Source: Macrostomum lignano (lineage: Eukaryota). From it: a stretch of 64,000 bases of DNA. The DNA is taken from NCBI GenBank assembly GCA_002269645.1, contig NIVC01000102.1, positions 515,950 through 579,949 of the forward strand. Direction: 5' to 3'. Below, piece after piece: positions 11,241 to 38,700 of the stretch; position 1 is the stretch's first letter, and every line of letters begins with the position of its first letter. The translations under genes and the position numbers were made by a program. A model generated the notes under the pieces. It was not told the origin of the DNA and made no database searches. It was given only the letters and a program-made list of their open reading frames with translations.

Positions 11241-14200
11241 TGTTATGTTTTGGATATGAATGTTAGATTACGGCATAGCCGTCTGTGCTGCGCTTAGTTC
11301 GTATCTGCAGCTCTCGTATATTTAGCTTATAAAGACATAAAGCTAAGGTCATAGACAACTTAATTCGGTCTGTCTGCGACATCCCTTTTTTTCCAAAAAG
11401 AAGTGTCATACGCATTAATGGATGAATGAAATGATAACTGGCATTGTCAGTTAGTTCAGTTTGAGTGCATATAATTATGAAGCCTTGTAAAATTGAGTTG
11501 GCTTCACTTCACGTCCATATCGTGTAATGTATTTTGTTCCACCAGATTTTCCAGAATCCAGCTGCGAATTGTGTACTGTATCGGATGCATGAGCGTCTGA
11601 GCTGTAAGTCTGAATCGTTCCATTGTTAGAATCCTGATTAGGTAGTTGAATCCTTGAATACTCTGGTATGGTCTGCATTCTGCGGTCTGTATTGCGCTTT
11701 GCCAGAAATCTGCGATTTCGTCTGAATTCACGACCTGTAGCAGTTCGAACTTTGTATGACCTGTCTGGGTCAGTGACATCGGGTTTCACGATTTCTGCAG
11801 GAATCCATTGTCTTCGATCTTCTTGCATCCACACCTGATCTCCTTCTTTAAACGGTCGTAGGTCTCGTGCAGTGCGATTGTAGTAGAATGCCTGTTTACT
11901 GTTCTTCTCTGCCAAAATCTCTAGTTCACGTTTTGTCCAGACTTGTCTTGGTTTCAGCTGTTCAATGGGCAGTGGCAGTTGATATCTGAGCTTTCGTCCC
12001 ATCACTAGCTCAGCCGGTGTCGGTAGCCCTCTTTCAATTGGCGTATTCCGATAGTGTAGTAATGCACAATTTATATCTTCTGCTTTGTTTAGAAATCCTT
12101 TAACTGTCTGAACAGCTCTTTCTGATAGGCCATTTGATTGTGGATATTTTGGCGACGATGTCCTAATTCGTATACCTTTCTGTTCAGCAAACTCTTTAAA
12201 CCTGTTGGATCCAAATGGAGGTCCGTTGTCACATCTTATCACTTCTGGAGTACCATAGGTAGCAAAATATTGTGACAGCTGTTTTATGACGCACTCTGCT
12301 GATGTAGTCGTGATCTTATCAGTGCAGATCCATCGACTTAACCTGTCAACCAGGACAATGTGTGTTTCTCCTTTCCAATAGAAAATGTCAGTTCCACACT
12401 CTTGAAATGGATACTCAGGTATTTCAACCATTTTCATGGATTCTTTTTGATGAAGAGCTTGGTAACTTTGGCATTTTTCGCATGAAGAAATGTATTGCTC
12501 AATGTCATGGCGCATTCGAGGCCAAAATACAGATTCAGTAGCCTTCATCAACGTCTTTTCCACGCCTTGATGACTTTCATGGAGGATTTGAAGCATTTGT
12601 CTTCGCATTGCATCAGGAATGAATATTTTGCTGCTCTTGTATATGAGTCTGTCATTCTCCATCAGTTCATGCCGAATATTCCAGAATGGCTTCAGCTCTT
12701 CAGCTATTTGGGATTTGGCATCTGGCCAACCCTCTCGAATCTGGTCCTTTAGCTTATGACATAAATCGTCAGCATTTGTGTGATGCTGGATGTCCTTTAG
12801 CAAGTTGTCTGGTAGGCATACACGAGCTACTCCAAGTATTTGGCACTGAATGTCATCATCAATATCATTGGATGAATGTACGGATTTCAGATAAGCGCGG
12901 CTTAGTGTATCCGCAAGGTATAGTTCTTTTCCGGGTACATACGTCACATTGAGATCGAATTCTTGAATTTTCAAAGCTAGTCGCTGCAGTCGAGCTGATA
13001 GTTCACTCAGTGGCTTTTTCATAATGAATTGCAGGGGCTTGTGATCTGATTCAACCTGTACGTGCCGACCCCATAAGTATTGTCGAAATCTGCGACATCC
13101 AAAGACTATTGCTAAGAATTCTTTTTCGATTTGAGCATATTTCTTTTGAGCAGGAGTCATCGATGACGATGCGTATTCAATGACGTGTCCATCTTGCATC
13201 AATGCGGCTCCGAGTCCATCTTTACTGGCATCTACACTTAGAATGACACTCTGATCTGGGTTAAATTGTCCCAATAGTGGAGCTTTGCACAGTGATTCCT
13301 TAATTGCTTCATATGCTTCTTCCTGCCGTTTTCCCCAGTTCCACGCTACATCTTTTTTCAGTAACTGTCGCAAAGGTGAAGCAAGCGCTGAGAAATTTGG
13401 TATGAACTTCGACAAGAAGTTTGCGCTGCCGATGAATCTTTGTAGTTGCGCGGCTTTTTCAGATATCTGGGAGTAACTGTTCGGATGCGGCATGTCTTTG
13501 ATGCTTCGTATCTTTTCCGGATCGATCTTGACTCCTTCGCTGGTTAGAATATGTCCTAGGAATTTCAACTCTCGCTGTCCGATTTTAGCTTTGGTCTTGT
13601 TTAGCTTTAAATTCTTATCCTTGCACTGCTGTAGCAGTTGCCTCACCGAGTCATCATGCTCTTTCCTTGTTCTGCCCCACACGATTATATCGTCAATATA
13701 GTTTGCGGAGTTTGCAACATGACTCGTGATCTCTTCTCTGATTTTTCTCTGATACGCCTCTGGAGCATCCTTCAATCCGAATGGCAGTCTGTTCCACCTG
13801 TAGACTCCGAAAGGTGTATGAAAGGCGGTTAGAAGAGAGCTTTCATGATCTAAAGCTACTTGATGAAATCCTGCTGTAGCATCAAAAGTTGAAAAAAACT
13901 TTGCGCCAGTCATCTTGCTAATAATTTCATTATATGATGGAATTGGGTACCGGTCTCGAATGATGAACTCGTTTAGACTTTGCGGATCGAGACAGAGACG
14001 CACAGAACTGTCAGGCTTCCACACAACCACAACGTTGGATACCCACTCCGTGGGGTGCGAACACTGGGAAATCATTCCTTGCTCACTGAGGCGATGCAGC
14101 TCATCTCTTAATGCTTTCAATGCTGCAAACGGAACTTTTCTTGGACCCTGAACTCTGGGAACAGCGTTCGTCTGTAAAACTATGTGGTGTGTTCCTGGCA

Positions 14201-20224: not shown

Positions 20225-20895
20225 GTCCCGTCAGTGAATGTTCATGAGAGAGCTGTCAGGCTGTAAGTCACTGAAAGTTCATAAGGGAGTTGTCAGGCTG
20301 TCAGTCACTGAATGTTCATGAGGGAGCTGTCAGGCTGTCAGTCACTGAATGTTCATGAGGGAGCTGTCAGGCTGTCAGTCACTGAATGTTCATGAGGGAG
20401 CTGTCAGGCTGTCAGTCACTGAATGTTCATGAGGGAGCTGTCAGGCTGTCAGTCACTGAATGTTCATGAGAGAGCTGTCAGGCTGTCAGTCACTGAATGT
20501 TCATGAGGGAGCTGTCAGGCTGTCAGTCACTGAATGTTCATGAGGGAGCTGTCAGGCTGTCAGTCAGTGAATGTTCATGAGGGAGCTGTCAGGCTGTCAG
20601 TCAGTGAATGTTCATGAGGGAGCTGTCAGGCTGTCAGTCACTGAATGTTCATGAGGGAGCTGTCAGGCTGTCAGTCAGTGAATGTTCATGAGGGAGCTGT
20701 CAGGCTGTCAGTCACTGAATGTTCATGAGGGAGCTGTCAGGCTGTCAGTCACTGAATGTTCATTAGGGAGCTGTCAGGCTGTCAGTCCCTGAATGTTCAT
20801 GAGGGAGCTGTCAGGCTGTCAGTCACTGAATGTTCATGAGGGAGCTGTCAGGCTGTCAGTCACTGAATGTTCATTAGGGAGCTGTCAGGCTGCCA
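20225..20895. repeat. 37-bp minisatellite, ~18 copies
   Basis: Unit gtcactgaatgttcatgagggagctgtcaggctgtca. Confidence 0.95.
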
Positions 20896-21759
20896 GTCTC
20901 TGCAGGGTACATGAGTACATGATGAAAGTACATGATGAAATCAATTTGCAGACTGATTGAGGTGATTCTGAGAGCAGCTGCTTAAAGAATCCAGGAGCAT
21001 GTACACACAATATTTTAAGCCATTAAAGTACATTTTAAATATCAGAAACATGTGCAGTAAAATTTCTCAAACTGCACGGGCAAAGCCAGAGGCTTACAGT
21101 TTCTGAGTTCAGCTCAAGCTGCTGCATCAAGTCTGTCCAGCTTCTCCCTGACCCAACCGACCTTAGGATTTTCCAGATTACCAGGTTTCCATGCAGATTA
21201 CTGTCACCTGTATATTTGGCTTATATATTTCATTAAAAGCATTGGCAATTGTGTATTGAAGTCCGCAGAACAAAATCGCAGAAAAAAGCCCGCATCAAAG
21301 CAGACACGCAGTTTGAACGGATAAAGAAATTCATAATTTATAATGCAGGCTGAATTGAATTGCAGCACGAATGTACAAAACTGCAGTTCATAGCAGGAGG
21401 GCTACTCGCACTCGATGGCTCTCGATGTGCTCATTTCCTAAAAAAGTAGCAAAGTCAGCTACAGGAAAAATCTTCGGCATAACTTGATCCAAAAGTCTAT
21501 GAGCGGTACAGTTACAAGTACATGCTTCGGACAACATACCTACATCATGTACAGTTAATCCAACAGCATGTACATATAATGTAACAGGATGTACATATAT
21601 CTAACAGCATGTACAAAAGCCTGCATAGATAATCCAAGAGAATGCAGAGATAATTCAACAGCATTTTCATACATTAAAAAAGCGTGTACAGAAAATTCAA
21701 CAGTATATGTATAGATAATGTGACGTGATGTACAATGTAACAGGATGTAAAGATAATGT

Positions 21760-22070
21760 AAGAGGATGTGCAGACAATCCAACAACTTGTGCAGAAAATC
21801 CAACAGCATGTGCAGACAATCCAACAGCATGTGCAGACAATCCAACAGCATGTGCAGCCAATCCAACAGCATGTGCAGACAAGCCAACAGCATGTGCAGA
21901 CAATCCAACAGCATGTGCAGACAAGCCAACAGCATGTGCGGTCAATCCAACAGCATGTGCAGTCAATCCAACAGCATGTGCAGACAAGCCAACAGCATGT
22001 GCGGTCAATCCAACAGCATGTGCAGACAATCCAACAGCATGTGCAGACAATCCAACAGCATGTGCAGACA
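21760..22070. repeat. 21-bp minisatellite (ccaacagcatgtgcagacaat)n, ~15 copies
   Basis: Directly visible. It produces spurious ORFs in all six frames. Confidence 0.95.
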
Positions 22071-22276
22071 ATATTCATAACCATTGCATATTATGATATT
22101 AAAGATAATTCACAGAAAATTAGCAAAAATAGTTGAAATACAAATTCTAAAACTTACGGACTCAACTGAATTTAACAGAAGAAAGTCAAGGAAGCCAAAC
22201 GGTAAAAGTACATTATTATGGGTTCTGAAATTCGAGTCCAGAAAAATTAAAAAATCTGAGTAACGAAGTCCTCAGG

Positions 22277-25200
22277 TCACTGCAGTCTCATTCGAATAAG
22301 CTTGACGTGAGTCCAGCTGTCTCTCTGCTCCGCTGCTGTTTCCATGGCAACGAAGCGACCCAAGTCGACCCCGTCTCGCCGCAGCCTCGCCCTCGCCCAC
22401 AGCCTCCGCTCCTCATCTTCCCTGCTGCGGTGAGCGCCGCTGTCGCTGCCGCTGCGGTTCGAAACTCGCCACCGCTTCTGCCTGACCCAGCCGATCTTCT
22501 CCTCGTCCTGCGTCTCCATGACGACGCGTCTCTCTTTCTCGATCATCTCCATCTGCTGCAAGCTGAGCTCCACGTGCTCGCGGCAGTCGCTGTAGTGAGC
22601 CAGAGTGAGCAGCTCCTCCAAGTCCGGGTCTTCTTCCAGCTCTCGCTTCCAATCGTCCAGTTTAATTGCAGGTGCGCGATTGCAGAGCAGCTCAGCTTGG
22701 AGACTCCAGCTCAGGCAGCGAAAGTTCACGTACAGGTGGGAGGAGAGAGGCTGCGACAGTCTGGCTGTGAACAGAGTCTGCGTGAACTCGGGAAGGAATG
22801 GGAAGCGAGGCGGAGAGTCGCAGGGGAGGCAGAACCTCCACGCCCAGTCTGAGTCTGCTGGCAATTCATAAATTCGAATACCCTGTGGCTTTAACCCTGA
22901 CTGAACCTGATGTCTCTGCAGCTCCATCGCGAGTCTCTCAGCCTCCTCAGATTCTCTGAACTTCAAATGCGCCATTGCGGTCATGCACAGGGCGGCGCAC
23001 TTGCACCACTGCAGCTCATGCAGGAGACTGAGCTGCCTCATCAGGGTGTATCTTTTGCTTGATTCCGACTGCAGCTCGCTCACACACTGGTGCACCACAC
23101 TGTACACGTCTGCGAAATTGTAGTACATTTCTGTGTAGCCACTTCCTTCCCTGATCTCAGTGACAGCAGGCGGCGCTGTCAGAGGCAGCAGAGTGAACGG
23201 GTGAAAGTAGAACTTCTCTGACTGCAGAGGTCTCACGAGTCTCCTCAGCTGCTCGACCACTCCACCGATGTCGCTTCTCAGCTCAAAAAGTCCGTCTCGA
23301 ACCCTCGCCTTCGTATTGTCGAAGTCGCCGCCGATTCCAGCGTTCTTGAAGTAGAGCGGAGCGTCGGGCATGAAGAAGTGCGGCATGCACTCATCGGGCG
23401 AGCTGCTCGAGTCGATGAAGCTCAGCATCAAGTCGAGAGACTCCTTGAGCAGAGCGATCAGATTGTGGAGCTTCCAAGCGTCAGTTTCGGTATCTGTGCC
23501 ATGCTTCTCCAGCATTGTAAAGAGCAGTGTCTTTGCATGGTAGGTCTTGAGTCCAGGTGTGTCCAGAGTGAGCGGCAAGTGTCTCTTGAAGATGAACTTG
23601 ATGAGTGTGAACAGCTGGCCCTGGACTGTGCTCAGCCGTCCCATGATGTATTTCTCTTGGAAGCTGAAGCTCACTCTGAGCTCGTTGGTCGAGCTCGGTC
23701 TGGTCGCCCGCACGAGGTGAACTCTGTTATTGAATAGAACCGGTTTTCTACTTCTGTCCTCACAGAAACTGCTGCAGCACTCGATTGCATGGCACGTGTC
23801 CTGTGCAGGCCGCACACCGCACGCCGTGGCTGTCACTGCAGGTTGGCTGCCTGCAAAGCGCAGTGAGCGGAGAGTGGCTTTGTGGCAAGTGAAAAAAATG
23901 GGTTGGTTTGAAACTGCAGATTTGCTCCTGGCCGGTTGGGAATTTTGCTTTTGCAACTCCATTTTCATTTACTAATCAATACACACGAGCTATTTTTATT
24001 TAATATCAATAAAAAATGTGTACATTGTGGGCGGCGTTGCCTAGCCTGCAAAGGCGTTAGAGACTCCAGTGAGAGTGGGGGGCGCCTCTCGCTGTGTGGC
24101 GAGGGTTGCAATGCTCTCCGTCTGGCCCAGTGTACAGCACAAGCTGCTCGGTGAGACGTCACAGAATTTCGACGCTTCTTGAAGAGCCAAATAAGTGCAC
24201 CTGTGAGGCATGAGCCTCTGCACCCACTGAGTTCACCCAGCTTCAGCTTCAGGTGCTCTGGCTTCATCAGGTTGCAGCTCAGCACAGCTGCTCAAGCATC
24301 ATCAGAACTCAGTGCCCCGCAGCAAGGCACCAATCAGGCAGTCAGGGCGGCTTCGGTTTATTTTGTTTGAAATTTCCCAAGTGAGAGCAGCAGCACCTCA
24401 GCAGAGCCATGCCGCCTACCGTGGGTCACCCAAGCACCGCTGCATCCACTCTGCTGCAATCGGAGCCTGTGAATTCAAAACCCAATGGCCCGGCTCAGCC
24501 AGTTGGCATCAAAGTTTTCTTTTCAATTTCGCCTGCCGCTTATTTCAGCACCCAAGCCGACATTCGCAGTCACAGAAACTGCTGGAGACTATGCGCCACT
24601 CGGTTGCAAAATTTAAAGTTGAGCAAAGTTAATGGGCCTCCAGTTGCATGCGGATCTCAGCATTCTGATGATGAACCCAGCCTCACTCACCTGCTCCCAC
24701 TGCCACCTGTGCGTGGCCCTCCATGACCTGCAGCCGAGTGGCGTCTCGGCAGGAACGATATCCCTCTCTGTCGCAGCCACCTTCCAGATGGAACTCTTGC
24801 CCAGCAACCAGCACAGTCCAGTCAATGTCCGAGTCTGCAGCTGTCCTGCCGTTCACTTGCACCAGACTGTTGGCCCAGCCCTCTGCGTAGCTGCCCGTCA
24901 TCTGCCTGTCATCCTGTGTGAGGACTTGAGCGACTTCTTCCAGCCAGTCAGCCAGTCTCTGCTGACACTTTGCTCTCTCCTCGGTGAATCCCGCCTCGCT
25001 GAGCAGTCGATGCAGCTCCTCACTCAGACGCCTGTCTTGCTGAGAGTCATCTGAGAGCCTGGAACGATTCGAGATGCGTGTGAGAGATTTGCTCAGAGTT
25101 GGATGGACGGAACAAGCAGGAGAGCTGAGAGTGCAGCTGCTGCAGCACTCAGACTGGCATCTCAAGCAGGAGAGCTGAGAGTGCAGCTGCTGCAGCACTC

Positions 25201-28200
25201 AGACTGGCATCTCAAGCAGGAGAGCTGAGAGTGCAGCTGCTGCAGCACTCAGACTGGCATCTCAAGCAGGAGAGCTGAGAGTGCAGCTGCTGCAGCACTC
25301 AGACTGGCATCTCAAGCAGGAGAGCTGAGAGTGCAGCTGCTGCAGCACTCAGACTGGCATCTCAAGCAGGAGAGCTGAGAGTGCAGCTGCTGCAGCACTC
25401 AGACTGGCATCTCAAGCAGGAGAGCTGAGAGTGCAGCTGCTGCAGCACTCAGACTGGCATCTCAAGCAGGAGAGCTGAGAGTGCAGCTGCTGCAGCACTC
25501 AGTCCAACCCAATCTCATCCCTGCCGAGTTTCGCTGCAATTTCTGCCCCAAGCTGCCAGCCTGTTGGAAGGTGCAATGAGGCAGTGAAAGCCGAACCGGT
25601 CAGACTCACCGATGGCGGCCCGACTCCAAGCGGTGAGCGGCTGCCTGCCGGGCCTCTGGGCTACTGCAATGCAGGAAGGAAAGTAAGGGTTCTCACTTCT
25701 CACAGCAGTTGAGTCGGAGATTGTCATGCACCAGAAGTTTCTCTCGAAGTAGAAAAAATTCAAAAAGCGGATGGGGGCGTTCTTGTTGCGTCTTTTTTCT
25801 GTTTTCTCTTTTTCTCCCATTTTTCTGGCTCACCTCTTTTCTTGTTCCCTTTGTTTTCTACTTCTGCCAATTGCATTTTCTATTGCAAGAATTTTTACAA
25901 GCAATAACATTGCCTCACTCACCCCGCTTCACTGGGATGAAGCAGCCGCAGCACCTGCTGCTGCTCAAATCGCTGTGCCACCTGCGCACACGTCTGACCC
26001 CGACCGTCTCGATGACTCGCATCCGCTCCTCTGTCCATCAGAGCCTTGGCTGCTCGCACATGACCGGCTTCGCACGCTCGTGACAGAGCAGTCCGACCCT
26101 GACTGTCTTCAGCACGCACTGACGCACCGAGATCGATGAGTTTCTCAATGAGCTCATGATGACCTGCATCAGCTGCCAGCATGAGAGCAGTGGCTCCAGT
26201 GCTGTCTTCTGGGAGATCGACATGCTGTGTGCTGACTCGCTCATCATTGATCAGTGTGACAGCAATTGTGACAGCAAGAGCGACGTGTCTTTGAGAGATG
26301 GAGAGACGGAGCAGCTGTGTGATGTGAGGTGGCTGCATTCGAGATAGGGTGTCGGTGAGAACAGAGTTCCTGCCTTCGATGGCCATTGCTGCAGTGAAGC
26401 TGAGGATGGTGCTGGATTGGAAGAGCCAGTCGGGCTCTAGGCCAAGGAAGGCAGCGACATCTTCGTGAAGACGAGAGCAAGTCGCGACTGCGCATTGGAA
26501 ACGGAGATTCGCTCTCTGATCGGGACTTGAGAGAAACGAGATAAGAAACTCGACGACATCCTGCAGACCATTGCTTGCAGCAGATTCGGCAGCTTTGATG
26601 CACCAATCATCTCTTTTTGTTTGGTCGGCGACTGTCGGCACAAGAAACTTGACGATTTCCATGTGGCCATATCTGCCAGCAGATGCGGCAGCTTTGATGC
26701 AGCAATCATCTCTTTTTGTTTGGTCCGCGACTGTCGGCACGAGAAACTTGACGATTTCCATGTGGCCCTTGATTGCAGCAGATTCGGCAGCTTTGATGCA
26801 GCAATCATCTCTTTTTGTTTGGTCAGCGACTGTCGGCACGAGAAACTTGACGATTTCAAAGTGACCATTACTGTAAGCAGATTCGGCAGCTTTGATGCAG
26901 CAATCATCTCTTTTTGTTTGGTCCGCGACTGTCAGCACGAGAAACTTGACGATTTCAAAGTGACCATTTCTGCCAGCAGATTCGGCAGCTTTGATGCGGC
27001 AATCATCTCTTTTTGTTTGGTCCGCGACTGTCGGCACGAGAAACTTGACGATTTCAATGTGGCCCTCGTCTGCAGCAGATTTGGCAGCTTTGATGCAGCA
27101 ATCATCTCTTTTTGTTTGGTCAGCGACTGTCGGCACGAGAAACTTGACGATTTCAAAGTGACCATTTCTGCCAGCAGATTCGGCAGCTTTGATGCGGCAA
27201 TCATCTCTTTTTGTTTGGTCCGCGACTGTCGGCACGAGAAACTTGACGATTTCAATGTGGCCATTGAATGCAGCAGATGCGGCAGCTTTGATGCAGCAAT
27301 CATCTCTTTTTGTTTGGTCAGCGACTGTCGGCACGAGAAACTTGACGATTTCAATGTGGCCCTTCACTGCAGCATATTCGGCAGCTTTGATGCGGCAATC
27401 ATCTCTTTTTGTTTGGTCAGCGACTGTCGGCACGAGAAACTTGACGATTTCAATGTGGCCATATCTGCCAGCAGATCCGGCAGCTTTGATGCAGCAATCA
27501 TCTCTTTTTGTTTGGTTAGCGACTGTCGGCACGAGAAACTTGACGATTTCAAAGTGACCATTACTGTAAGCAGATTCGGCAGCTTTGATGCAGCAATCAT
27601 CTCTTTTTGTTTGGTCCGCGACTGTCAGCACGAGAAACTTGACGATTTCAAAGTGACCATTTCTGCCAGCAGATTCGGCAGCTTTGATGCGGCAATCATC
27701 TCTTTTTGTTTGGTCCGCGACTGTCGGCACGAGAAACTTGACGATTTCAATGTGGCCCTCGTCTGCAGCAGATTTGGCAGCTTTGATGCAGCAATCATCT
27801 CTTTTTGTTTGGTCAGCGACTGTCGGCACGAGAAACTTGACGATTTCAAAGTGACCATTTCTGCCAGCAGATTCGGCAGCTTTGATGCGGCAATCATCTC
27901 TTTTTGTTTGGTCCGCGACTGTCGGCACGAGAAACTTGACGATTTCAATGTGGCCATTGAATGCAGCAGATGCGGCAGCTTTGATGCAGCAATCATCTCT
28001 TTTTGTTTGGTCAGCGACTGTCGGCACGAGAAACTTGACGATTTCAAAGTGACCATTACTGTAAGCAGATTCGGCAGCTTTGATGCGGCAATCATCTCTT
28101 TTTGTTTGGTCAGCGACTGTCGGCACGAGAAACTTGACGATTTCAATGTGGCCATATCTGCCAGCAGATCCGGCAGCTTTGATGCAGCAATCATCTCTTT

Positions 28201-29485
28201 TTGTTTGGTCAGCGACTGTCGGCACGAGAAACTTGACGATTTCAATGTGGCCATATCTGCCAGCAGATCCGGCAGCTTTGATGCAGCAATCATCTCTTTT
28301 TGTTTGGTCAGCGACTGTCGGCACGAGAAACTTGACGATTTCAATGTGGCCATATCTGCCAGCAGATCCGGCAGCTTTGATGCAGCAATCATCTCTTATT
28401 GTTTGGTCAGCGACTGTCGGCACGAGAAACTTGACGATTTCAATGTGGCCCTTCACTGCAGCATATTCGGCAGCTTTGATGCAGCAATCATCTCTTTTTG
28501 TTTGGTCAGCGACTGTCGGCACGAGAAACTTGACGATTTCAATGTGGCCCTTCACTGCAGCAGATTCGGCAGCTTTGATGCAGCAATCATCTCTTTTTGT
28601 TTGGTCAGCGACTGTCGGCACGAGAAACTTGACGATTTCAATGTGGCCCTTGATTGCAGCATATTCGGCAGCTTTGATGCAGCAATCATCTCTTTTTGTT
28701 TGGTCAGCGACTGTCGGCACGAGAAACTTGACGATTTCAATGTGGCCATATCTGCCAGCAGATCCGGCAGCTTTGATGCAGCAATCATCTCTTATTGTTT
28801 GGTCAGCGACTGTCGGCACGAGAAACTTGACGATTTCAATGTGGCCCTTCACTGCAGCATATTCGGCAGCTTTGATGCAGCAATCATCTCTTTTTGTTTG
28901 GTCAGCGACTGTCGGCACGAGAAACTTGACGATTTCAATGTGGCCATATCTGCCAGCAGATCCGGCAGCTTTGATGCAGCAATCATCTCTTTTTGTTTGG
29001 TCAGCGACTGTCGGCACGAGAAACTTGACGATTTCAATGTGGCCATATCTGCCAGCAGATCCGGCAGCTTTGATGCAGCAATCATCTCTTATTGTTTGCG
29101 CAGCGACTGTCGGCACGAGAAACTTGACGATTTCAATGTGGCCCTTCACTGCAGCATATTCGGCAGCTTTGATGCAGCAATCATCTCTTTTTGTTTGGTC
29201 AGCGACTGTCGGCACGAGAAACTTGACGATTTCAATGTGGCCCTTCACTGCAGCAGATTCGGCAGCTTTGATGCAGCAATAATCTCTTTGTTTTTGGTCA
29301 GCGACTGTCGGCACGAGAAACTTGACCAGTTCTAAGTGACCATGGGATGCAGCATCAGGTAAATACCTTTTGCAAAAAAAATATGTGTTCTTTTCTCCTA
29401 TCTGACGGTCGAGATGATGTCTGAGTGCTTGGATATTTCCTGTGCTGGCAGCCTCATCAGCACTGATCTCGTGATCAACCTGCAT
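22277..29485 (-). CDS. Predicted ankyrin-repeat / Mab-21 (cGAS-like receptor, cGLR) fusion protein, join complement(29485..25923,25663..25610,25058..24691,23850..22277), 1852 aa
   Basis: All three introns begin GTGAGT and end CAG, and the phases 2-2-1 match (3563+54+368+1574=5559 nt, no stop). NTase motifs: GSYAEG...SDID, QPAVT, DTCHAIEC, HLV...ELRVSFSFQEK, IKFIFK...LKTYHAKTLLF. A helical C-terminal region follows. The fusion rests on splice prediction only. Confidence 0.7.
22338..22351. promoter_or_regulatory. RFX X-box GTTTCCATGGCAAC overlapping the 3' end of the cGLR ORF
   Basis: Matches the X-box consensus within a GC-rich stretch. Confidence 0.35.
25113..25502. repeat. 50-bp perfect tandem repeat, ~7.8 copies, in the intron before the NTase exon
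   Basis: caagcagg recurs at 25113, 25163, ... 25463 and the copies are identical. Confidence 0.95.
26560..29340 (-). repeat. 99-bp coding tandem repeat: 28 ankyrin-like 33-aa units plus an N-terminal cap unit
   Basis: Unit A-x-x-A-x-x-x-GH(I/F/M)EIVKFLVPTVADQTKRDDCCIKA. Canonical ankyrin repeats follow (TGATALMLAADAGH, QGRTALSRACEAGH). Confidence 0.95.
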
Positions 29486-29607: not shown

Positions 29608-29815
29608 GTCTGCTGTTAGAGTGGCAGATGTCAGTCACGGCTGCTGTCAGAGTGCCAGATGTCAGTCACGGCTGCTGTCAGAGCGGCAGATGTCAGTCAC
29701 GGCTGCTGTCAGAGTGGCAGATGTCAGTCACGGCTGCTGTCAGAGCGGCAGATGTCAGTCACGGCTGCTGTCAGAGTGGCAGATGTCAGTCACGGCTGCA
29801 CTCAGAGCGACAGAT
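29608..29815. repeat. 31-bp tandem repeat, ~6.5 copies
   Basis: Unit gtcagagYggcagatgtcagtcacggctgct. Confidence 0.9.
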
Positions 29816-30742
29816 GTTTCAAAGGTTTGTGCAGCCGGTTGCCAGAAAGATTTTACCGCCTCATCTCTCAGCTGCCCACCTTTTTGCAGCCTCTGGCGAG
29901 CGCCGACCACCCCTGGCCTTTGCAGCCGAATCTTCTCACCCGTGCATGAGCGCTGAGTCCGCCGCCTTCGCCTCTGTGCACCCAGCATGGCAACGGAGAG
30001 GCTGCGGCTGCAGCGGCCACCCCAAGCTGTACTTGATGAGGCTGAGCTGACCCATTGTGCAGTGTGAGGTCTGCGAACGCTTTTCATGGCCTACTGAGCA
30101 GTGTAAAATGCTTCTCAGTCCCTCAGTGCATCAGGTTTGAGAAGGCGTTCAAATGTGCAAGAAAAATGCATTGTTAAACTTGGTCAGGCTTCTCTTTCAC
30201 CCTGCCCGCTGGCCTTCCAATTGCAGCAGTTGCAGACGATCGGTTGCCAAGTAACAGGGGGTTGGCTCTCCCCGTCTCTCCGAATGCTTTCGCCTGTTCG
30301 TCTCGTGTGCATTCGAGCCAGCTGAGACTCTGCTGGGTTGAATATGGCGAGTGCATTTTAGCAGCAATAATTAACATTCTTTTGCTTTTCTAAAGAAGCT
30401 TCTCATCACTGGCGCCCCTCTGTTTGATATTGTAAACAGATGGCAAACGGCCATTGTGGCAAAAATTGGCTTACAGGGGCAGACAGAAACCTGCAGTGAC
30501 GATGGAATCAATTGAAATATAAATCTTTATTCATATTTGCCGGGTAGCACAGTACTATTTATTGAGATCGCCTTGCAGTCCTTGTTAAAGTCTTGGTCCA
30601 CTAAGCCATTGGGACACGTCTGGAACTCTCTACATTGAATAAGCTGTCTATCTACCTGGTAATCGGCCTAGGAATTCAATTATTCAACCTCTGAGTCATC
30701 CCGGCCAGCTGAAATCCTGCCACTCTTGATTCAGTGCACGTG

Positions 30743-32726: not shown

Positions 32727-35700
32727 CTTGCCGAAGTTTGCTTGCAGGAACTTTCACGTTCACCCCGTTTCAAATCGATTTGTCTAATTTTCGCAACGTT
32801 TGTATAACAAAAGTGAATTCAAATATTGTTCACTCTAATAAATTGACTGAAACCGGGCCTCATTTACAATTTACATCGGTTTAATATCTTCAAGCGTGTT
32901 TGCTTTAAGAGTGAAAAATTATTAATCATTGTTTTCAATTAATTTATGTGTAAGACTTGCACTTTGTCGAGACGTCAATCAAACGCGATTCAAACGCAAT
33001 TTTGACTTTATATTTCGAGGTGCCGAGTCACTTCCCCGCTTACAGTACCAACATGGTCTGATGCGAGAGCGCTTTTTAAATTGGGGCGCACTGTCGGAAA
33101 TTACAACAAAATACATTATCGATATTATACATTAACAGTCCTAACCCCCAACTAAACAAAAATGCATCCATACGAAATTCAATGATGAGATTTGCTACAT
33201 TATCCCCCCAACGGAAATTGACAATGTCCTCATTGGCAAAAAAACTGCATTACACAAGGAGAAAGTTACATGTAGTTTACCACAATTTTACAGTCACACA
33301 AAATTCACGGTATATGCATATAAGTAGTGAGCACATCAGTACTCGGCTTAATGCTACAGATCGGCAAAAGAGGCGAAGCACCGCACTGTGAGCAGCCAAG
33401 ATGCATCGCAAAAGAAACGGGCAACCAATGCTTCCATAACATTTCGGATGCTTGATTCCCCACAGAAATGCACAATACAGGGTTAGAAACACATGAAAAC
33501 AGCCCAAATGGGACTTGTGACATGCCAACTTGCTTGACAGTTGAATACATTGAATTGTGCGATTTCATTGGGACCAGGAACAGCAATCGGGGATTTAAAG
33601 GTACGATTTCGATTAAATGAACGAATTGTTGGATCGATAGGTTATGCCTTAATAAGAAGCAATAAAAGAATTTTTTTAATAAAATAGTGCGATTATTTTG
33701 ATATTGAAATATTGAGCGATAAAAGCGAAAGAAATATTTACACAGAAGGCATGAAAATAATAAGTAACACTGAAGTATTTCGCGAAGTGCATTAAAGCAG
33801 CTGAAATAGGGCAGCACAATTAGATCAATAATAAAAACACGACCGTAAATTCCAACAGAATTCTAAAGGGTATGCAGTACAGCGGCACGGCTGCGCCCAA
33901 CAAGGGCCAAACTGAACAATTACTAATCCCCACAGTCCAAAACCCGCCAAGCATCGACCACCGCCACACAAAAGAGGACTCTAGACAGATGGGGCAGCCA
34001 AAACGCGAACAAAATTGCGATTAAAACTTACAACATTGTACATGCTGAACTTCAATTAGGGAAAATTTGTGCACTCTGCAATTTAAGTCCAAGGAACCTC
34101 AGCACAGTCCATATCCTCACACTCTATCAAATGACGACCCAGTCAGCGTCAAGCACCTCACTGCTGTCGTCACTGGCCGCTCCGCTCCGAGGCTGATCCA
34201 GGGGCCGTGGCTGATGCGCTCGCTTCAGTTTGTTGACGTGGACCACCCGGCCAGCATCGCCGTCCTTGTACTCAACGGGGCGGACCAGGTAATTGACAGG
34301 CGATGTACGCCGCAGAACTCGAAACGGTCCGGTCCACGGTGCCTGATGCTTCCGTGGCAGGCCACTCGTCCGCGACAGGGCCGACGGCGGCACAAAGAGC
34401 CACACCAGGTCGCCTGCTCGAAAACGGCGCCGCGCCGCCTTCTGGTCGTAGTAGCGCCGCTGCCGTCTTTGTGCCGCTGCTGTCGCCAGCCTCACGGATT
34501 CGAAGGCGCTGAGCAGTCGATCCCGGTTGTCCGCGGCGAATTTTCCTGTAGTTCTCGGTGGCTCCGGCAGTCGGTAGACAATGTCCAGCGGCAAGGTCAC
34601 CTCTCGGCCCGTCATCAGAAAGTGCGGCGTGAAACCGGAGGTTGCGTTGACACTACTGCGGTAAGCAAGGAGACAGTGCGGCAACACCTCCTCCCACTCG
34701 TCGAACTGGACGGTCTGAAGGTGGCAGCGGAGCATCTGGTGGAGTATGCGATGGAACCGTTCTACCAGACCGTCACACTGCGGATGGTAACCAGACGTCC
34801 GCGTCTTCTGTACCGTCGAGCAGTCTGCAGAGGCTCCGGATTATTTTCCCGTCAACGGCCTTGCCACGGTCGGAGTGGAGGATGTGCGGTGCGCCCCACC
34901 GCGACACCCAATTGTCAAACAGCGCCCTGGCAATTGTTGCTGCTTTCTCATCCGGCGTAGGCACCAGCTCCACCCACTTCGTGAAGTAGTCCATGATCGT
35001 CAACAGACGATCATTTCCATGCCGAGACACGCCGATCTTAACCACATCGATGCCTATGCGCTGCATCGGGAAACTGCTCTCTATCGATCGAAGTGGTGCC
35101 CGCTAATGGCCGCTGGTTTTGGCGCGCTGGCACACCTGACATGCTCTGACTGCAACTCTGATGCTCTCGGACATTTTCGGCCAGTAACACCTCGACTTGA
35201 GGGCTGCCAGTGTCTTCGCTTCGCCCAGATGACCAACTTCGTGAATCTCATCGATCAGCTGCTTCGACTCCACCAGTCTGTGCAGGGCTCCATCAACGAA
35301 ACATAGTTCTTTGATCTTCTGCGCCAGGATCAGGCTCCCTGGTGGTAGTCGGGCTCGTTGCTGGTCGCTGAGTCTTGTCTTGCCTTTGGCGAGAAGACGA
35401 AATACTGGTCCGATGTCAGCGTCTTTGAGCTGCCGCTCACGCAGCGTCAGAGACTCGTTCGACTGCATTGCTCTCGCCTGGCCGGTCTCATTGTCGCCAT
35501 CATCATCCTGGTCATCACTATCGCTGGACTCCTCGCTTTCGCTTGGCCTCGGCTGCAGCTGCTGCTTCCGTCTAGATGGAGCGCGGCCAGCAGTCCTAGG
35601 GTCGTTCTGAGGGTCGGCTGCTGAAGGCGCAGGGTCTGTCGTCGCCTCGTTGACCAGCGCGAGTTTAGTACCACCAGCTTCCACTTGACAGGGTGTTGAT

Positions 35701-38700
35701 GCCGTTTGCACTGGTGTTTCAGCGAATTTTTCTGCTTGGCAAGCTACGTTCGCAACCGGCCTCGCTGTCTCCGCAATTGGCTCCGTTTGACAAGCTACCG
35801 TAGCTGACGGCTTCCGTAGTTCAGCTGCCGATTCTGGCCGACAAACCCGGCACTGAATCGTGCATTTCGATGTCCGGCGTGAAAGTGCATCGGCATTCGA
35901 GTGCTGACGTCCAGGACGGAACACTATCTCGAAGTCAAACTCGTCGAGGATTTGCAACCATCTCGCTAATTGACCCTCCGGTTCCTTGAAGTTCAGCAGG
36001 TACGTCAGGGCTTGATGATCGACTCTGATCGTGAATGGCCGTGCCAGCAGATAACTTCGAAATTTCTTTACAAATTCGACAACTGCCAGTAGCTCGCGCC
36101 GTGTCACGCAGTAATTGCGTTCAGCCCGAGACAGCGTGCGACTTGCATACGCCACGACTCGCTCTTCACCAGCCTGAATTTGCGACAAAACAGCACCAAC
36201 TGCGCAATCACTGGCGTCGGTGTCCAAGATGTACTCACCGCCAGTGTCGCTGGTGTCCGGAAAGGCCAGGATCGGCGCGGATGTAAGCACTTGCTTCAAC
36301 TGGTTGAAGGCCACTTCGGCGGCTGGTGTCCATTTAAAGCCGGTTGTCAGAGTCAGTCGCCTTAGCGGTTCTGCAATCTTGGCGTAGTCGCGAACAAATC
36401 TCCTGTAGTACGATGTCATGCCAAGGAAACTTTTGACGTCCTTGGCGAGTGCGGTTTTGGCCAGTCGCGCACTGCTGCTGTCTTCGACTCGTCGACTGCG
36501 ATGCCAGTCCTGGAGACTCGGTGACCCAGAACGATGATGCTGGAATTGGCGAAACGACATTTGGACGGCTTAAGACGCAAGTTGGCTTCGCGAAGACGCT
36601 CTAGCACCGCTCTTAGCCGATTGTTGTGTTCGGCCATCGTCCGGCCCATGACGATAACATCATCTATGAAGACAAGGCACGCTTGTCACGTGAGTCCCCG
36701 GAGCACTAATTGCATCAAGCGCTGGAATGTAGCTGGTGCATTGCGGAGGCCGAATGGCATTACGTTGAACTCAAAAATGCCTTCGTGGCAGACGAATGCC
36801 GTTTTTTCTTTGTCTTTCTCATTCATTTCAACTTGCCAATATCCGCTTTCCAGGTCGAGTGCGGAGAAAAAACTGTTGCCCTCCAGCGCATCCAGCGTGT
36901 CGTAAACGCGAGGCATTGGAAATGCATCGGGCTTGGTCACCGAGTTGAGCTGCCGGTAGTCGAGGCAAAAACGTGCCGAGCCGTCTTTTTTTCGAACCAG
37001 GACAATCGGCGACGCCCACTGAGAAGATGATGGCTGAATGACACCTCTGCTCAGCATGTCTTCGACCAGCTCTTTTTGCTGCACGATTGCCGTAGGAGCT
37101 GCACGGCGTATACCTTGCCGGATCGGTCTCGCATCACCGGTGTCGATGGTATGGCTCAGCAGACGGGTGCAGCCCTGGTTGCCAGGTGATGCAAACACGT
37201 CGTTGAATTCCAGAAGGAGGTCTCTGATCTGCTGCTGTTCACTCGCTGAAATTTCGTCGGCAATGTGCACTTCTCGAAGCCATGGTGCATTGCCATCTAT
37301 TGAGGTTGTCGCTGTTGCCATGCTGGTAAACTGGAGCCGCGTCCCGCCTTGGCTGCTGAGTGGCGTGAACCATCCGATGGTGTCGCCTTCTCTGACAGCC
37401 ACCGGTGCATCGCTAGCGTTGATGATTGCGACGCCCATGCCATTGTTCGATATTTTGGCTACACAGCGAGCAATCAAGACCTTCGATGACCTGCTACCGT
37501 TGACGATGCCGGGTGCCTCCGAACTTGTCCACGCGGTCACGTGCAACGGTCGGACTGGAACGGGTCCAACCTTCACCAGGCTGTAACTGAACTGCTGCTG
37601 CCGCCACCAGTTTGCTGGACTGCGCTGCCTGCTTCGACTTCCGCAGCGGCACTGTTGCTCCAAGGCCATTGAAAACGAGACAGCCCGAACCGAGATGAAT
37701 TAAGCAGTCTTGCTTGTCAAGAAAGTCACATCCCAGAATTATAGGTACATTTAAGTCTGTCACCACCAGAAAGGTGTGTTGAAACTGGACAGATCCGAGA
37801 GAGAAGTACAAATGAATCTCACCCAGCACGCTCGCCGGATTGCCACTCACGCCATAGATGGTTTTTTTGCTGGGTTTGAACTGCCGCCTGATTGATCGCG
37901 CGATGTTGAGACTGATGCAGGAAACTTCGGCACCTGTGTCGATCAAGCAGGGCCGACGACGTCTGCAGATGCGCGCGGTGACGAAACGCGCTTGACCGGG
38001 CTGGCAGCTGGGGCGTGAGGGCGGGGCCGATTTGCTCAGTGCCGAGAGGGCCGGTACTGGCCCTGTGGACCAGCCCCCCTGGCGTTTGGGCAGTTCCTTC
38101 GAATGTGACCTGGCAGATTACAGCTGTAACACACTGGCATTGGTCGGTGCGACGGATGATGGCCAGCTTGAGCTTGGGCCTGTTGCTGAGGTGGTCTTGG
38201 GGTCGCATGCGGCTGTCGATTCAGTGGCTTCCACGATGTTGTTGGGTCACTCTGGTGCTCACCACCAGGTCGTTGTCCATGCATTGGCGGAGCTGCTGAT
38301 CCCACCACGGGTGCCGACGTCGCCGTGCCGCGTTGATGCTGCTGATTATGTCCTTGGCCTTCCAGGAATTGCTGAGTCTCGCGGATCTGCTGAGCCCATC
38401 GGAGCGCTTGCTCTGTTGTTGTCACTGCCATTGGCATATTAAGAAGACGCTCTGACACATAGCTGTTGTTTAGGCCCTGGATTAACTGGTCCAAGACAGC
38501 CTGTTGAAGGAACTCGTGAGCACCTGCATCAGGAAATGCTTTGACAGCCAGGCGTTGCAATGCAGTGAGAAACTGTTCGAAGGTTTCATCTTTTCCTCGG
38601 TATCGACTTCGAAGCTCAAGCCGAAGCAAGGCTGTACTCTTTGCTCCTCCGTACCGCGCTCGCAGAAACTGTAGCAGTGAGTCATACCGTGCTCCAGGGA

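What the first reader, a model, noticed from the sequence alone, without database searches (positions are those of the whole stretch)
22277..29485. Ankyrin-array sensor spliced in frame to a cGAS-like (Mab-21/cGLR) nucleotidyltransferase: candidate diversifying innate-immune receptor
Seen: three separate ORFs in the track join into one 1852-aa frame. The ankyrin ORF 'stop' (GGG TGA GT) is actually a GTGAGT donor at 25922. A 54-nt phase-2/2 exon (25663-25610, GSPEARQAAAHRLESGRHR) links it to the NTase exon, and a phase-1 intron joins the Mab-21 C-terminal exon. Known: cGAS/cGLR enzymes make cyclic dinucleotide second messengers on ligand sensing, and some invertebrate cGLRs carry accessory repeat domains. 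Inference: the repeat array is a swappable recognition module controlling the synthase, like the repeat-shuffling sensors of fungal NLRs (e.g. HET-E WD40). I am not aware of this architecture with such a repeat code having been characterised.
Basis: partly seen in the sequence, partly recalled or inferred. Interest (0 to 1): 0.9.

Follow-up and report, generated by a model that had tools for sequence, protein, structure and literature searches.

The report
Flatworm ankyrin-array cGAS-like receptor gene
This is an intact four-exon gene from the flatworm Macrostomum (or a very close relative). It joins an unusually long array of near-identical ankyrin repeats, variable at a few positions, to a cGAS-like enzyme of a family already listed as cGAS-like receptors; the repeat array looks new, its immune role is untested.

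Summary
On the minus strand, four exons (29485-25923, 25663-25610, 25058-24691, 23850-22277) join through three GTGAGT...AG introns into one 1852-aa frame. All three junctions, including the 54-nt microexon, match Macrostomum lignano paralogs whose GenBank models derive from RNA-seq (P0123, P0003).

The C-terminal half is a Mab21/cGAS-fold nucleotidyltransferase:
- Every one of the top 50 PDB fold matches is cGAS, MAB21L1 or MB21D2.
- hhalign against mollusc cGLRs gives 99.3% probability.
- The GS, D-I-D and third-Asp motifs are present.

The N-terminal half holds 27 near-identical 33-aa ankyrin-like units. Twenty of 33 codons are invariant at the DNA level. Variation clusters in codons 9-17 (P=1e-4) as 10 cassette types. 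A 495-bp block is duplicated with one mismatch.

The novelty claim is only partly right. Li et al. 2023 catalogued this family as ANK-cGLR fusions and cloned the closest paralog's enzyme domain. What seems unreported is the fungal-NLR-style array: highly conserved repeats with hypervariable positions, and 4 to 29 anchor-delimited units in the four loci counted. Positive selection is not shown (pN/pS about 1). Expression of this locus, enzyme activity, ligand and downstream receptor are all untested.

The parts
22277..29485 (-). Whole coding region of the ANK-cGLR gene: 4 exons, 1852 aa, stop at 22279-22277.
   Evidence: Joined frame has no internal stop. Exon boundaries match paralogs P0123 and P0003 by tblastn.
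25923..29485 (-). Exon 1: N-terminal cap, ankyrin-like array, C-terminal cap and linker, and three canonical ankyrin repeats. Ends in phase 2 at a GTGAGT donor.
   Evidence: Pfam Ank_2 446.9 bits and Ank_4 336.7 bits. N-terminus matches P0123, P0044 and P0023.
26612..29284 (-). 27 full 33-aa (99-bp) ankyrin-like units with high internal conservation (mean 86% aa identity). Hypervariable codons are 9, 10, 12, 13, 14 and 17, plus codon 4. One degenerate unit flanks each end.
   Evidence: TRF 27.8 copies, 92% matches. Unit table and codon variants. Clustering P=1e-4. Identity.
26810..27997 (-). Two copies of a 495-bp (5-unit) block inside the array, 27997-27503 and 27304-26810, differing at 1 nt. 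This is a recent internal duplication.
   Evidence: Unit order ABCCDCEFDCCCGHIJKLCMHIJKNOP. 1 mismatch in 495.
26006..26215 (-). Canonical ankyrin repeats just before the enzyme (DSTGATALMLAADAGHHELIEKLIDLGASVRAEDSQGRTALSRACEAGH...).
   Evidence: Best Ank_2, Ank and Ank_5 stretches at ORF residues 1119-1198. Conserved in all paralogs.
25664..25922 (-). Intron 1 (259 nt, GTGAGT...AG). Contains the apparent TGA stop of the ankyrin ORF.
25610..25663 (-). Exon 2: 54-nt microexon, phase 2 in and phase 2 out, encoding GSPEARQAAAHRLESGRH(R).
   Evidence: The same peptide is in P0123, P0003 and P0023.
25059..25609 (-). Intron 2 (551 nt). Holds a perfect 50-bp minisatellite in 7.8 copies at 25113-25502.
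   Evidence: The same minisatellite sits in paralog introns: L003 x2.3, L004 x14.8.
24691..25058 (-). Exon 3: N-lobe of the nucleotidyltransferase. G-S at 24895-24890; D78 at 24829-24827; D80 at 24823-24821 (numbering of the 647-aa C-terminal query).
   Evidence: G, S and D78 are invariant and D80 nearly invariant in alignment A2. The same GS..EG...SD.D motif occurs in mollusc cGLRs.
23851..24690 (-). Intron 3 (840 nt, phase 1, GTGAGT...TTTGCAG).
22277..23850 (-). Exon 4: rest of the NTase core, C-lobe, family-specific helical domain, basic tail and stop. Third catalytic Asp D141 is at 23800-23798. The Mab-21_C match is at 23566-23354.
   Evidence: Pfam PF20266 22.7-23.0 bits. Foldseek hits to cGAS, MAB21L1 and MB21D2. 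hhalign to mollusc cGLRs 99.3% with D141 on their invariant Asp.
22436..23185 (-). C-terminal domain of about 250 aa, conserved in the family (WAWRFCLPC..., YVNFRCLSWSLQAELL). Mostly helical with a small sheet. No known relative found.
   Evidence: AF2 pLDDT 82, pTM 0.84. Best PDB fold hit E=0.14, TPR-like. No PDB sequence hit. No Pfam hit.
29610..29817 (.). 31-bp minisatellite (6.7 copies) about 125 bp upstream of the start codon. Also found upstream of paralogs; possibly part of the 5' region.
   Evidence: L001 9123-9484 x11.8 and L002 9562-9950 x12.5.

Best explanation
This is a protein-coding gene of Macrostomum lignano or a very close relative. It belongs to a large, apparently lineage-specific family of cytosolic ankyrin-fused cGAS-like receptors (cGLRs).

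Shown here:
- One 1852-aa frame from four exons.
- An N-terminal solenoid of 29 ankyrin-like units. 27 are near-identical, with variation confined mainly to inner-helix codons 9-17.
- Then three canonical ankyrin repeats and a short linker encoded by a microexon.
- Then a Mab21/cGAS-fold nucleotidyltransferase with the GS, D-x-D and third-Asp motifs present.
- Then a family-specific helical domain.
- The array differs greatly in length between paralogous loci. It carries very recent internal duplications, and its units resemble each other more than units of other loci. It therefore evolves by unequal crossing-over or conversion within the locus.

Inferred:
- The variable face of the ankyrin solenoid binds a non-self or modified-self ligand, more likely a protein than a nucleic acid. 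The enzyme core is acidic (pI 5.9).
- Binding relieves an inactive state of the NTase.
- The NTase then makes a nucleotide second messenger that triggers a downstream effector.
- Repeat shuffling gives the family a fast way to generate new specificities, as in the ANK, TPR and WD arrays of fungal NLRs.
For: Gene model. Junctions match RNA-seq-derived paralog models (annotation method in PMC5730564).

Enzyme identity:
- AF2 model has pLDDT 80 and pTM 0.81.
- All top 50 PDB fold hits are cGAS, MAB21L1 or MB21D2, best E 1.5e-5.
- The family profile hits PDB 'cGAS-like receptor 1' at 6.4e-7 and cGAS at about 1e-5.
- hhalign to a profile of mollusc cGLRs from the Li et al. screen gives 99.3% probability, E 7e-21, with D141 on their invariant Asp.
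- GS and D78 are invariant; D80 and D141 are nearly invariant.
- Paralogs are in the published cGLR catalogue and screen.

Array:
- Copy number, units and codon table.
- 14 of 23 variable nucleotide columns fall in 27 of 99 positions, P=1e-4, giving 10 cassette types.
- A 495-bp block is duplicated with 1 mismatch.
- Mean within-locus unit identity is 0.89, against 0.66-0.78 between loci. The nearest neighbour lies in the same locus for 27 of 29 units.
- TRF 99-bp copy number: none listed in L001, 3.4 in L002, 8.4 in L004, 11.3 in L003, 27.8 here.
- The 3.6-kb frame is intact, whereas paralog L003's array is frameshifted.

Possible link to cell death or immunity: paralog P0129 is ANK-cGLR-ANK-caspase.

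Acidic core. Li et al. associate a high predicted pI with nucleic-acid-sensing cGLRs.

Analogue: fungal NLR ANK repeats with high internal conservation and variable sites on the concave face (PMC4986451).
Against: - There is no transcript, protein or activity evidence for this locus.
- Pfam Mab-21_C scores just below its cut-off (22.7 vs 24.1 bits) and PF03281 does not hit.
- TM-scores to cGAS are only about 0.5.
- Active-site assignment in the N-lobe rests on motif and predicted strands, not on a superposition.
- pN/pS in the variable cassette is about 1.0, and synonymous divergence is also raised there. Positive selection is therefore not demonstrated.
- The cassettes number only 10 types and could be old variants that were amplified.
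- The genome is full of minisatellites, so expansion alone is not evidence of function.
- The M. lignano NTase constructs in the Li et al. screen are not named among the 15 active enzymes.
- The STING status of the host is unknown. A planarian is reported to lack cGAS and STING.
- Some paralogs have lost catalytic Asp residues (P0025, P0035).
Confidence: 0.6

Rival explanations
1. A real ANK-Mab21 gene, but not an immune second-messenger synthase. The Mab21-like domain would act as a pseudoenzyme or scaffold, as proposed for MAB21L1, or make a product for another process. The ankyrin array would be a structural or adaptor solenoid in some fast-evolving, lineage-specific biology.
For: MAB21L1 ranks second among fold hits. 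Some paralogs lack catalytic Asp residues. M. lignano constructs are not named among the active enzymes in Li et al.. The conserved 250-aa C-terminal domain has no counterpart in the solved structures or Pfam families searched here.
Against: The catalytic GS, DxD and D motifs are kept in this gene and in most paralogs. By sequence profile, cGLR1 and cGAS score far better than MAB21L1: 6e-7 and 1e-5 against 0.05. Li et al. describe Mab21L1/2/3 as lacking a predicted functional active site. Family expansion to at least 88 clusters, caspase-fused members and hypervariable repeats are typical of immune or conflict genes.
Confidence: 0.2
2. The long array is a recent, selectively neutral minisatellite-type expansion of an ankyrin exon, or is partly an assembly artefact of near-identical repeats. 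The locus could be a young pseudogene or an unexpressed copy. The 'code' would simply reflect a few ancestral units that were amplified.
For: The window holds 18 TRF rows scoring 300 or more (overlapping rows can describe one array), mostly non-coding. Blocks of 495 bp and 198 bp are duplicated with 1 and 0 mismatches. There are only 10 cassette types and pN/pS is about 1. Paralog L003's array is frameshifted. GenBank models excluded transcripts overlapping repeat annotations, so no annotated model shows a long array.
Against: The period is exactly 99 bp in all 28 intervals, with no indel or stop over 3.6 kb. Cassette positions show recombinant combinations, for example G-R with Y or N, and E, G or A at codon 9. 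The framework shows fewer non-synonymous than synonymous changes, pN/pS 0.5. The rest of the gene is intact and 87-88% identical to expressed paralogs.
Confidence: 0.15
3. Two or three separate genes: an ankyrin protein ending at the TGA at 25919, plus an independently transcribed NTase gene.
For: The ORF track shows a stop at 25919-25921. Several annotated paralogs (P0002, P0003, P0021) begin downstream of the array.
Against: The stop lies inside a consensus GTGAGT donor. P0123, P0001 and P0023 join array, canonical ANK, microexon and NTase in one protein, and P0123 and P0001 come from the RNA-seq-derived GenBank set. Truncated models are explained by repeat masking and by frameshifts in the assembly.
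Confidence: 0.04

Closest known systems
Macrostomum lignano ANK-cGLR paralogs (e.g. PAA62074.1 = BOX15_Mlig034155g1, PAA68676.1 = BOX15_Mlig016402g1), included in the cGLR catalogue and screen of Li et al. 2023
   Same: Same exon structure, same domain order (ankyrin-like units, cap, 3 canonical ANK, microexon linker, NTase, helical C-terminal domain). 87-88% identity over the enzyme half. Same catalytic motifs.
   Different: Paralogs carry about 3-11 TRF copies of more diverged units, or none listed (mean unit identity 0.69-0.80 at nucleotide level). This locus has 29 units with 27 near-identical (0.89). No 95%-or-better match was found among the four loci fetched, so this is a distinct locus, allele or strain.
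Animal cGAS-like receptors (cGAS, Drosophila cGLR1, mollusc and coral cGLRs)
   Same: Mab21/cGAS bilobal NTase fold. GS...[DE]h[DE]h...[DE] active site. The (W)R[VIL]SFS..EK and SYH.KT motifs of the C-lobe. A few per cent of cGLRs are fused to ANK or TPR repeats.
   Different: Very low sequence identity (13-19%). An insertion lies between the GS and DxD motifs. The core is acidic rather than basic. An extra 250-aa helical domain is present. Product, ligand and downstream receptor are all unknown.
[quoted passage not shown] 2014)
   Same: Tandem repeats with mean identity of about 86%, near the 85% threshold used there. A few hypervariable positions sit on a helix that forms the binding face. 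Repeat number varies, with evidence of unit shuffling or concerted evolution. The array is fused to a signalling module.
   Different: No NACHT or NB-ARC domain; the central module is a cGLR NTase. The repeats are N-terminal, not C-terminal. The host is an animal. Positive selection and allelic repeat-number polymorphism are not shown here.
Designed ankyrin repeat proteins (DARPins; from my own knowledge of Binz et al. libraries)
   Same: A consensus framework repeated many times with diversity restricted to a few surface positions. Positions 13 and 14 of the 33-residue unit are variable in both.
   Different: DARPin libraries also randomise the beta-turn positions 2, 3, 5 and 33. Here the other variable sites are 9, 10, 12 and 17 of the inner helix, and the TPLH motif is replaced by C-C-I-K-A-A.

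Membership tests
cGAS-like receptor / Mab21 nucleotidyltransferase family | Bilobal Mab21/cGAS NTase fold | tested here: met
   AF2 model has pLDDT 80 and pTM 0.81. All top 50 Foldseek PDB hits are cGAS, MAB21L1 or MB21D2, with best E 1.5e-5 and target-normalised TM of 0.34-0.53.
cGAS-like receptor / Mab21 nucleotidyltransferase family | Significant sequence-profile similarity to known members | tested here: met
   Family profile against PDB: cGLR1 (8gjy) 6.4e-7, cGAS about 1e-5. hhalign against a profile of seven mollusc cGLRs: 99.3% probability, E 7.4e-21. Single-sequence phmmer against PDB found nothing.
cGAS-like receptor / Mab21 nucleotidyltransferase family | Pfam Mab-21 (PF03281) or Mab-21_C (PF20266) above the curated threshold | tested here: not met
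   PF20266 scores 22.7-23.0 bits against a cut-off of 24.1. PF03281 gives no hit. The same marginal scores are seen in paralogs accepted as cGLRs.
cGAS-like receptor / Mab21 nucleotidyltransferase family | Catalytic motif G-S, [DE]-h-[DE] and a third acidic residue | tested here: met
   G56-S57, D78-I-D80 and D141. G56, S57 and D78 are invariant; D80 and D141 are nearly invariant in A2. D141 aligns to the invariant Asp of mollusc cGLRs. The N-lobe assignment is by motif and predicted strand only.
cGAS-like receptor / Mab21 nucleotidyltransferase family | Ligand-dependent synthesis of a nucleotide second messenger | not testable with these tools
   This needs recombinant protein and an NTP assay. 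Paralog NTase constructs were screened by Li et al. but are not named among the 15 active enzymes.
cGAS-like receptor / Mab21 nucleotidyltransferase family | A cognate receptor (STING or other) in the same genome | not testable with these tools
   No searchable Macrostomum genome was on hand. M. lignano is absent from the held copy of Li et al. Table S5. A planarian is reported to lack cGAS and STING.
Ankyrin repeat proteins | Pfam ankyrin-repeat profiles above threshold, with a 33-residue period | tested here: met
   Ank_2 446.9 bits, Ank_4 336.7 bits, Ank 279.2 bits. The period is exactly 99 bp. The register A11-A12-x-x-G15-H16...V20..L23 fits the ankyrin consensus (sequence; the consensus is from my own knowledge).
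Repeat domains with high internal conservation and hypervariable sites (as in fungal NLRs) | At least about 85% identity between units over at least 100 aa | tested here: met
   27 units, 891 aa, mean pairwise aa identity 86.4%. 20 of 33 codons are invariant at the DNA level.
Repeat domains with high internal conservation and hypervariable sites (as in fungal NLRs) | Variation concentrated at a few positions of each unit | tested here: met
   14 of 23 variable nucleotide columns lie in codons 9-17, hypergeometric P=1e-4. Codons 12-14 have 3-6 alleles that differ at several bases.
Repeat domains with high internal conservation and hypervariable sites (as in fungal NLRs) | Positive diversifying selection at those positions | tested here: inconclusive
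   Nei-Gojobori pN/pS is 1.04 in the cassette and 0.50 in the framework. The method is unreliable for multi-hit codons and recombining repeats. No population data were available.
Repeat domains with high internal conservation and hypervariable sites (as in fungal NLRs) | Repeat-number polymorphism and concerted evolution | tested here: inconclusive
   Between paralogous loci, TRF finds 3.4 to 27.8 copies and none listed at L001. Units are more alike within a locus than between loci. Allelic polymorphism could not be tested.
NOD-like receptors (NLR/STAND) | Central NACHT or NB-ARC NTPase domain | tested here: not met
   No such Pfam domain is found in any part of the protein. The resemblance to NLRs is one of design only.

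The most novel reading that the evidence does not exclude
The Macrostomum ANK-cGLRs may be an animal counterpart of NLR-type repertoires built on a cGAS-like switch. Arrays of near-identical ankyrin units would be reshuffled by unequal recombination to create new protein-recognition surfaces. Binding of a pathogen-derived or altered-self protein would then switch on nucleotide second-messenger synthesis. In the caspase-fused paralogs it would switch on a tethered protease directly. This would be a cGLR family that senses proteins rather than nucleic acids and that diversifies at the germline level within a single lineage.
Probability: 0.3. Interest if true: 0.8.

Novelty: new variant of a known kind. 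Interest (0 to 1): 0.6.

Why it matters
Li et al. state that many animal cGLRs appear inactive in vitro, probably because their activating ligands are unknown. A cGLR with a long, modular ankyrin surface whose variable residues can be read from the DNA offers a concrete handle. The array can be deleted, swapped between paralogs or used as bait to find ligands.

It would also show that repeat arrays kept near-identical but variable at a few positions, a strategy described for fungal NLRs, have been joined in an animal to a different signalling core.

Flatworms are otherwise reported to have lost much of the classical nucleic-acid-sensing machinery. A large cGLR expansion in Macrostomum therefore bears on how immune repertoires are rebuilt. 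M. lignano has transgenesis and RNAi, so the idea can be tested.

Tried and rejected
- Single-sequence phmmer of the 647-aa C-terminal half against PDB gave only chance hits. A family profile was needed.
- Pfam gave no PF03281 hit and a sub-threshold PF20266 hit.
- The conserved C-terminal 250-aa domain was modelled separately. It found no significant fold (best E 0.14, TPR-like) and no sequence match in PDB. Its role stays unknown.
- A homology search with the end of the array plus the cap was swamped by generic ankyrin proteins and added little.
- A test for positive selection on the units was inconclusive.
- No AATAAA or ATTAAA lies within 380 nt downstream of the stop.
- I looked for the same locus in the Mlig_3_7 assembly through four paralog loci. 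All are 82-94% identical, none is allelic, so the exact source strain or species is unresolved.
- STING presence in the host could not be tested. A search seeded with a vertebrate STING would not reach a flatworm homologue with the word-indexed tool, so I ran no further search on it.
- Long ORFs in other frames and on the plus strand across the array (for example 904 aa at 26621-29335) are by-products of a stop-free periodic sequence, not genes.
- Extra Pfam hits on the array (PTP-NADK, DUF3734, HEAT_2) have no individual significant stretch and come from summing over repeats.

Full report
**What is in the sequence**

The window is eukaryotic. It is rich in minisatellites and LTR-retrotransposon remains. 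On the minus strand between 22277 and 29569 lie three ORFs of 1216, 171 and 563 codons.

- The first is an ankyrin-repeat protein: Pfam Ank_2 446.9 bits.
- The third carries a marginal Mab-21_C match: 23.0 bits against a cut-off of 24.1.
- The second has the motif GSYAEGW...DSDIDW, typical of a nucleotidyltransferase.

**The gene model**

| Feature | Coordinates | Notes |
|---|---|---|
| Exon 1 | 29485-25923 | Ends ...GCG GG\|GTGAGT, so the TGA 'stop' is part of the donor |
| Exon 2 | 25663-25610 | 54 nt, encodes GSPEARQAAAHRLESGRH(R) |
| Exon 3 | 25058-24691 | N-lobe of the enzyme |
| Exon 4 | 23850-22277 | Includes the stop |
| Introns | 259, 551, 840 nt | All begin GTGAGT and end AG |

The product is 1852 aa with no internal stop.

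Sequence alone does not fix the acceptors. Fifteen or more in-frame AGs are available for exon 3 and six for exon 4. Homology fixes them.

- The closest relatives are all Macrostomum lignano proteins.
- P0123 (BOX15_Mlig034155g1, 1217 aa) aligns to the window in three blocks ending or starting at 25922, 25060-24689 and 23854-22280. The 18 residues between the first two blocks are the microexon peptide.
- P0003 and P0023 read ...AGSPEARQAAAH.L..G.HRLSDDSQQD... across the same joins.
- The GenBank models of that assembly were derived from a genome-guided RNA-seq transcriptome (PMC5730564). The junctions therefore have transcript support in paralogs, though not at this locus.
- The N-terminus (M..ISADEAA..GNIQAL.HHL) and the C-terminus (...RMRLQ) are also shared.

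That explains why several models (P0003, P0021) start just after the array. It also explains why no annotated protein shows a long array.

**The enzyme half**

An AlphaFold2 model of the 647 C-terminal residues, built with 25 paralogs, has pLDDT 80 and pTM 0.81.

- All 50 best PDB fold matches are cGAS, MAB21L1 or MB21D2. Best E is 1.5e-5 and target-normalised TM is up to 0.53.
- A profile of the NTase region finds 'cGAS-like receptor 1' (8gjy) at 6.4e-7, cGAS at about 1e-5, MB21D2 at 0.04 and MAB21L1 at 0.05.
- Against a profile of seven mollusc cGLRs taken from Table S3 of Li et al., hhalign gives 99.3% probability and E 7.4e-21.

In the numbering of the 647-aa query:
- G56, S57 and D78 are invariant in the family alignment.
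- D80 and D141 are nearly invariant.
- D141 aligns with the invariant Asp of the mollusc enzymes.
- The mollusc set has the same GS..EG...SD.D pattern.

The catalytic residues are therefore present, at window 24895-24890, 24829-24821 and 23800-23798. Two paralogs have lost them: P0025 has D80N, and P0035 has D78N and D80N.

The core is acidic, pI 5.9. Li et al. associate a high predicted pI with nucleic-acid-sensing cGLRs.

After the Mab21 fold comes a conserved domain of about 250 aa. Modelled alone it has pLDDT 82. It has no significant fold or sequence match in PDB and no Pfam match. Its function is unknown.

**The ankyrin half**

After a short N-terminal cap there are 29 units of exactly 33 residues.

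- The first and last units are degenerate. The middle 27 (29284-26612) average 86% pairwise identity.
- At the DNA level 20 of 33 codons never vary.
- Variation sits in codons 9 (E/G/A/K), 10 (S/Y), 12 (A/G/Y), 13 (V/R/I/S/F/D), 14 (K/Y/N/E) and 17 (I/F/M), plus C/R at codon 4. Codons 12-14 often differ at two or three bases.
- Fourteen of the 23 variable nucleotide columns fall in the 27 nucleotides of codons 9-17, hypergeometric P=1e-4.
- The cassette occurs in 10 types that look recombinant. For example G-R pairs with Y or N, and E, G or A occurs at codon 9.

Aligned to the ankyrin consensus (my knowledge of the motif), the unit reads D-D-C-C-I-K-A-A-x-x-A-x-x-x-G-H-x-E-I-V-K-F-L-V. The variable residues then lie on the first (inner) helix. 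[quoted passage not shown] I could not obtain coordinates to confirm exposure.

**How the array evolves**

- The unit order is ABCCDCEFDCCCGHIJKLCMHIJKNOP.
- A five-unit, 495-bp block is present twice with a single mismatch. A two-unit block is present twice with none.
- Paralogous loci are 82-94% identical to the window through exons and introns.
- The same upstream and intronic minisatellites occur at several of the paralogous loci.

| Locus | TRF 99-bp copies | Anchor-delimited units |
|---|---|---|
| L001 | none listed | not counted |
| L002 | 3.4 | 4 |
| L004 | 8.4 | 9 |
| L003 | 11.3 | 11 |
| Window | 27.8 | 29 |

- Units are more alike within a locus than between loci: 0.89 in the window against 0.66-0.78. 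For 27 of the 29 window units the nearest neighbour is in the window.
- This is the pattern expected from local unequal crossing-over or conversion.
- The L003 array has units of 96-98 bp and is out of frame. It is either a decayed copy or contains long-read indel errors.
- The window array has no indel in 28 intervals.

**What is not shown**

Nei-Gojobori pN/pS is 1.04 in the cassette and 0.50 in the framework. Synonymous divergence is also about five-fold higher in the cassette. The data show localised hypervariability, not proven positive selection.

A neutral amplification of a few old unit types, in a genome where minisatellites are everywhere, remains possible. The copy number of such an array in an assembly also cannot be checked here.

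**Comparison with what is known**

Li et al. 2023 (bioRxiv 10.1101/2023.02.22.529553 / PMC9980059) defined about 3,000 animal cGLRs.

- They noted that 87% are stand-alone enzymes and that some are fused to TPR or ankyrin repeats.
- They stated that nematodes and 'most platyhelminthes' have only Mab21-like proteins.
- Their Table S2 lists Ank_2 domains on PAA68676.1, which is P0001 here.
- Their Table S3 shows that the NTase portions of five M. lignano proteins, including PAA68676.1 and PAA93208.1, were cloned for the screen.
- None is named among the 15 enzymes studied further.

The family and its ANK fusion are therefore catalogued. I found no paper describing near-identical, positionally hypervariable arrays in cGLRs. 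The nearest described phenomenon is in fungal NLRs.

**Family context**

- A profile search of 1.84 billion representatives finds 88 clusters at E of 1e-30 or better and 916 at 1e-3 or better.
- Of the ten hits looked up, the eight that carry an organism name are all M. lignano.
- Members range up to 3379 aa.
- P0129, a GenBank (RNA-seq-derived) model, is ANK-cGLR-ANK-caspase.
- P0021 and P0123 are tandem neighbours on one contig.

This is the profile of a fast-expanding conflict or immune gene family, but the link to immunity is by analogy.

**Verdict**

| Claim | Status |
|---|---|
| The observation (in-frame join of three ORFs) | Confirmed |
| The gene is an ANK-cGLR of the Macrostomum family | Well supported |
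| The array is the ligand-sensing, diversifying module that gates the synthase | Best reading, but inferred |

The new element is the very long array of highly conserved repeats with a restricted variable cassette, and its dynamics across paralogs.

Noticed in passing
window 25113-25502: A perfect 50-bp minisatellite (7.8 copies, 100% identity) lies inside intron 2 of the gene. The same unit sits in the equivalent intron of paralogs with 2.3 copies (L003 10891-11004) and 14.8 copies (L004 12194-12933).
   Followed up: partly
window 29610-29817; L001 9123-9484; L002 9562-9950: A 31-bp minisatellite about 125 bp upstream of the start codon is conserved upstream of paralogous genes (6.7, 11.8 and 12.5 copies). 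It might be part of the promoter or 5' UTR, or simply inherited with the duplication.
   Followed up: no
window 11475-15572 (-), 35103-37669 (-), 47103-47900 (-): LTR-retrotransposon pol remains flank the gene. One is an uninterrupted 1365-aa ORF with RT, RNase H and integrase domains. A second copy is split into at least two ORFs. A third is an integrase zinc-finger fragment. A gag-like zinc-knuckle ORF lies at 38036-38857.
   Followed up: partly
P0129 (BOX15_Mlig026614g1, 2111 aa) and P0025: Some family members have the order ANK - cGLR - ANK - caspase (Peptidase_C14, 96 bits). P0025 of this type has Asn in place of the second catalytic Asp. This suggests a branch where the cGLR-like module is tethered directly to a protease.
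   Followed up: partly
L003 8723-9837 (upstream of P0021, NIVC01001976.1): The annotated paralog P0021 starts after an unannotated 99-bp array of 11.3 copies. Some of its units are 96-98 bp long, so the frame shifts three times. This is either a decaying copy or indel errors in the assembly.
   Followed up: partly
L003 and L004 (NIVC01001976.1, 136655-161723): Two family members (P0021 and P0123) lie in tandem on the same strand about 11 kb apart. The window holds only one member.
   Followed up: no
window 24777-24751 and 23791-23762 (residues C96, C104, H144, C148, C149, C153 of the 647-aa query): A cluster of conserved Cys residues (plus one His) lies in the NTase N-lobe next to the third catalytic Asp. 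C96, C104, C148 and C149 are invariant or nearly invariant in the family. It may be a metal site. Its position differs from that of the cGAS zinc thumb.
   Followed up: no
window 26621-29335 (+) and other frames across the array: Long ORFs (904, 400 and 255 aa and others) appear in other frames and on the opposite strand of the array. They exist only because a stop-free 99-bp unit is repeated.
   Followed up: yes
window 21766-22072 and 20230-20902: 21-bp and 37-bp minisatellites lie just downstream of the stop codon. The 37-bp one also lies downstream of paralogs L002 and L003. No AATAAA or ATTAAA signal was found within 380 nt of the stop.
   Followed up: partly
P0006 (UniProt A0A1I8..., 1036 aa): This predicted protein carries a second, diverged NTase N-lobe after the first complete cGLR unit (GSYSEGWGNSL...SDIDVMCLI). 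It is either a tandem cGLR fusion of the kind Li et al. describe or two neighbouring genes merged by the predictor.
   Followed up: no
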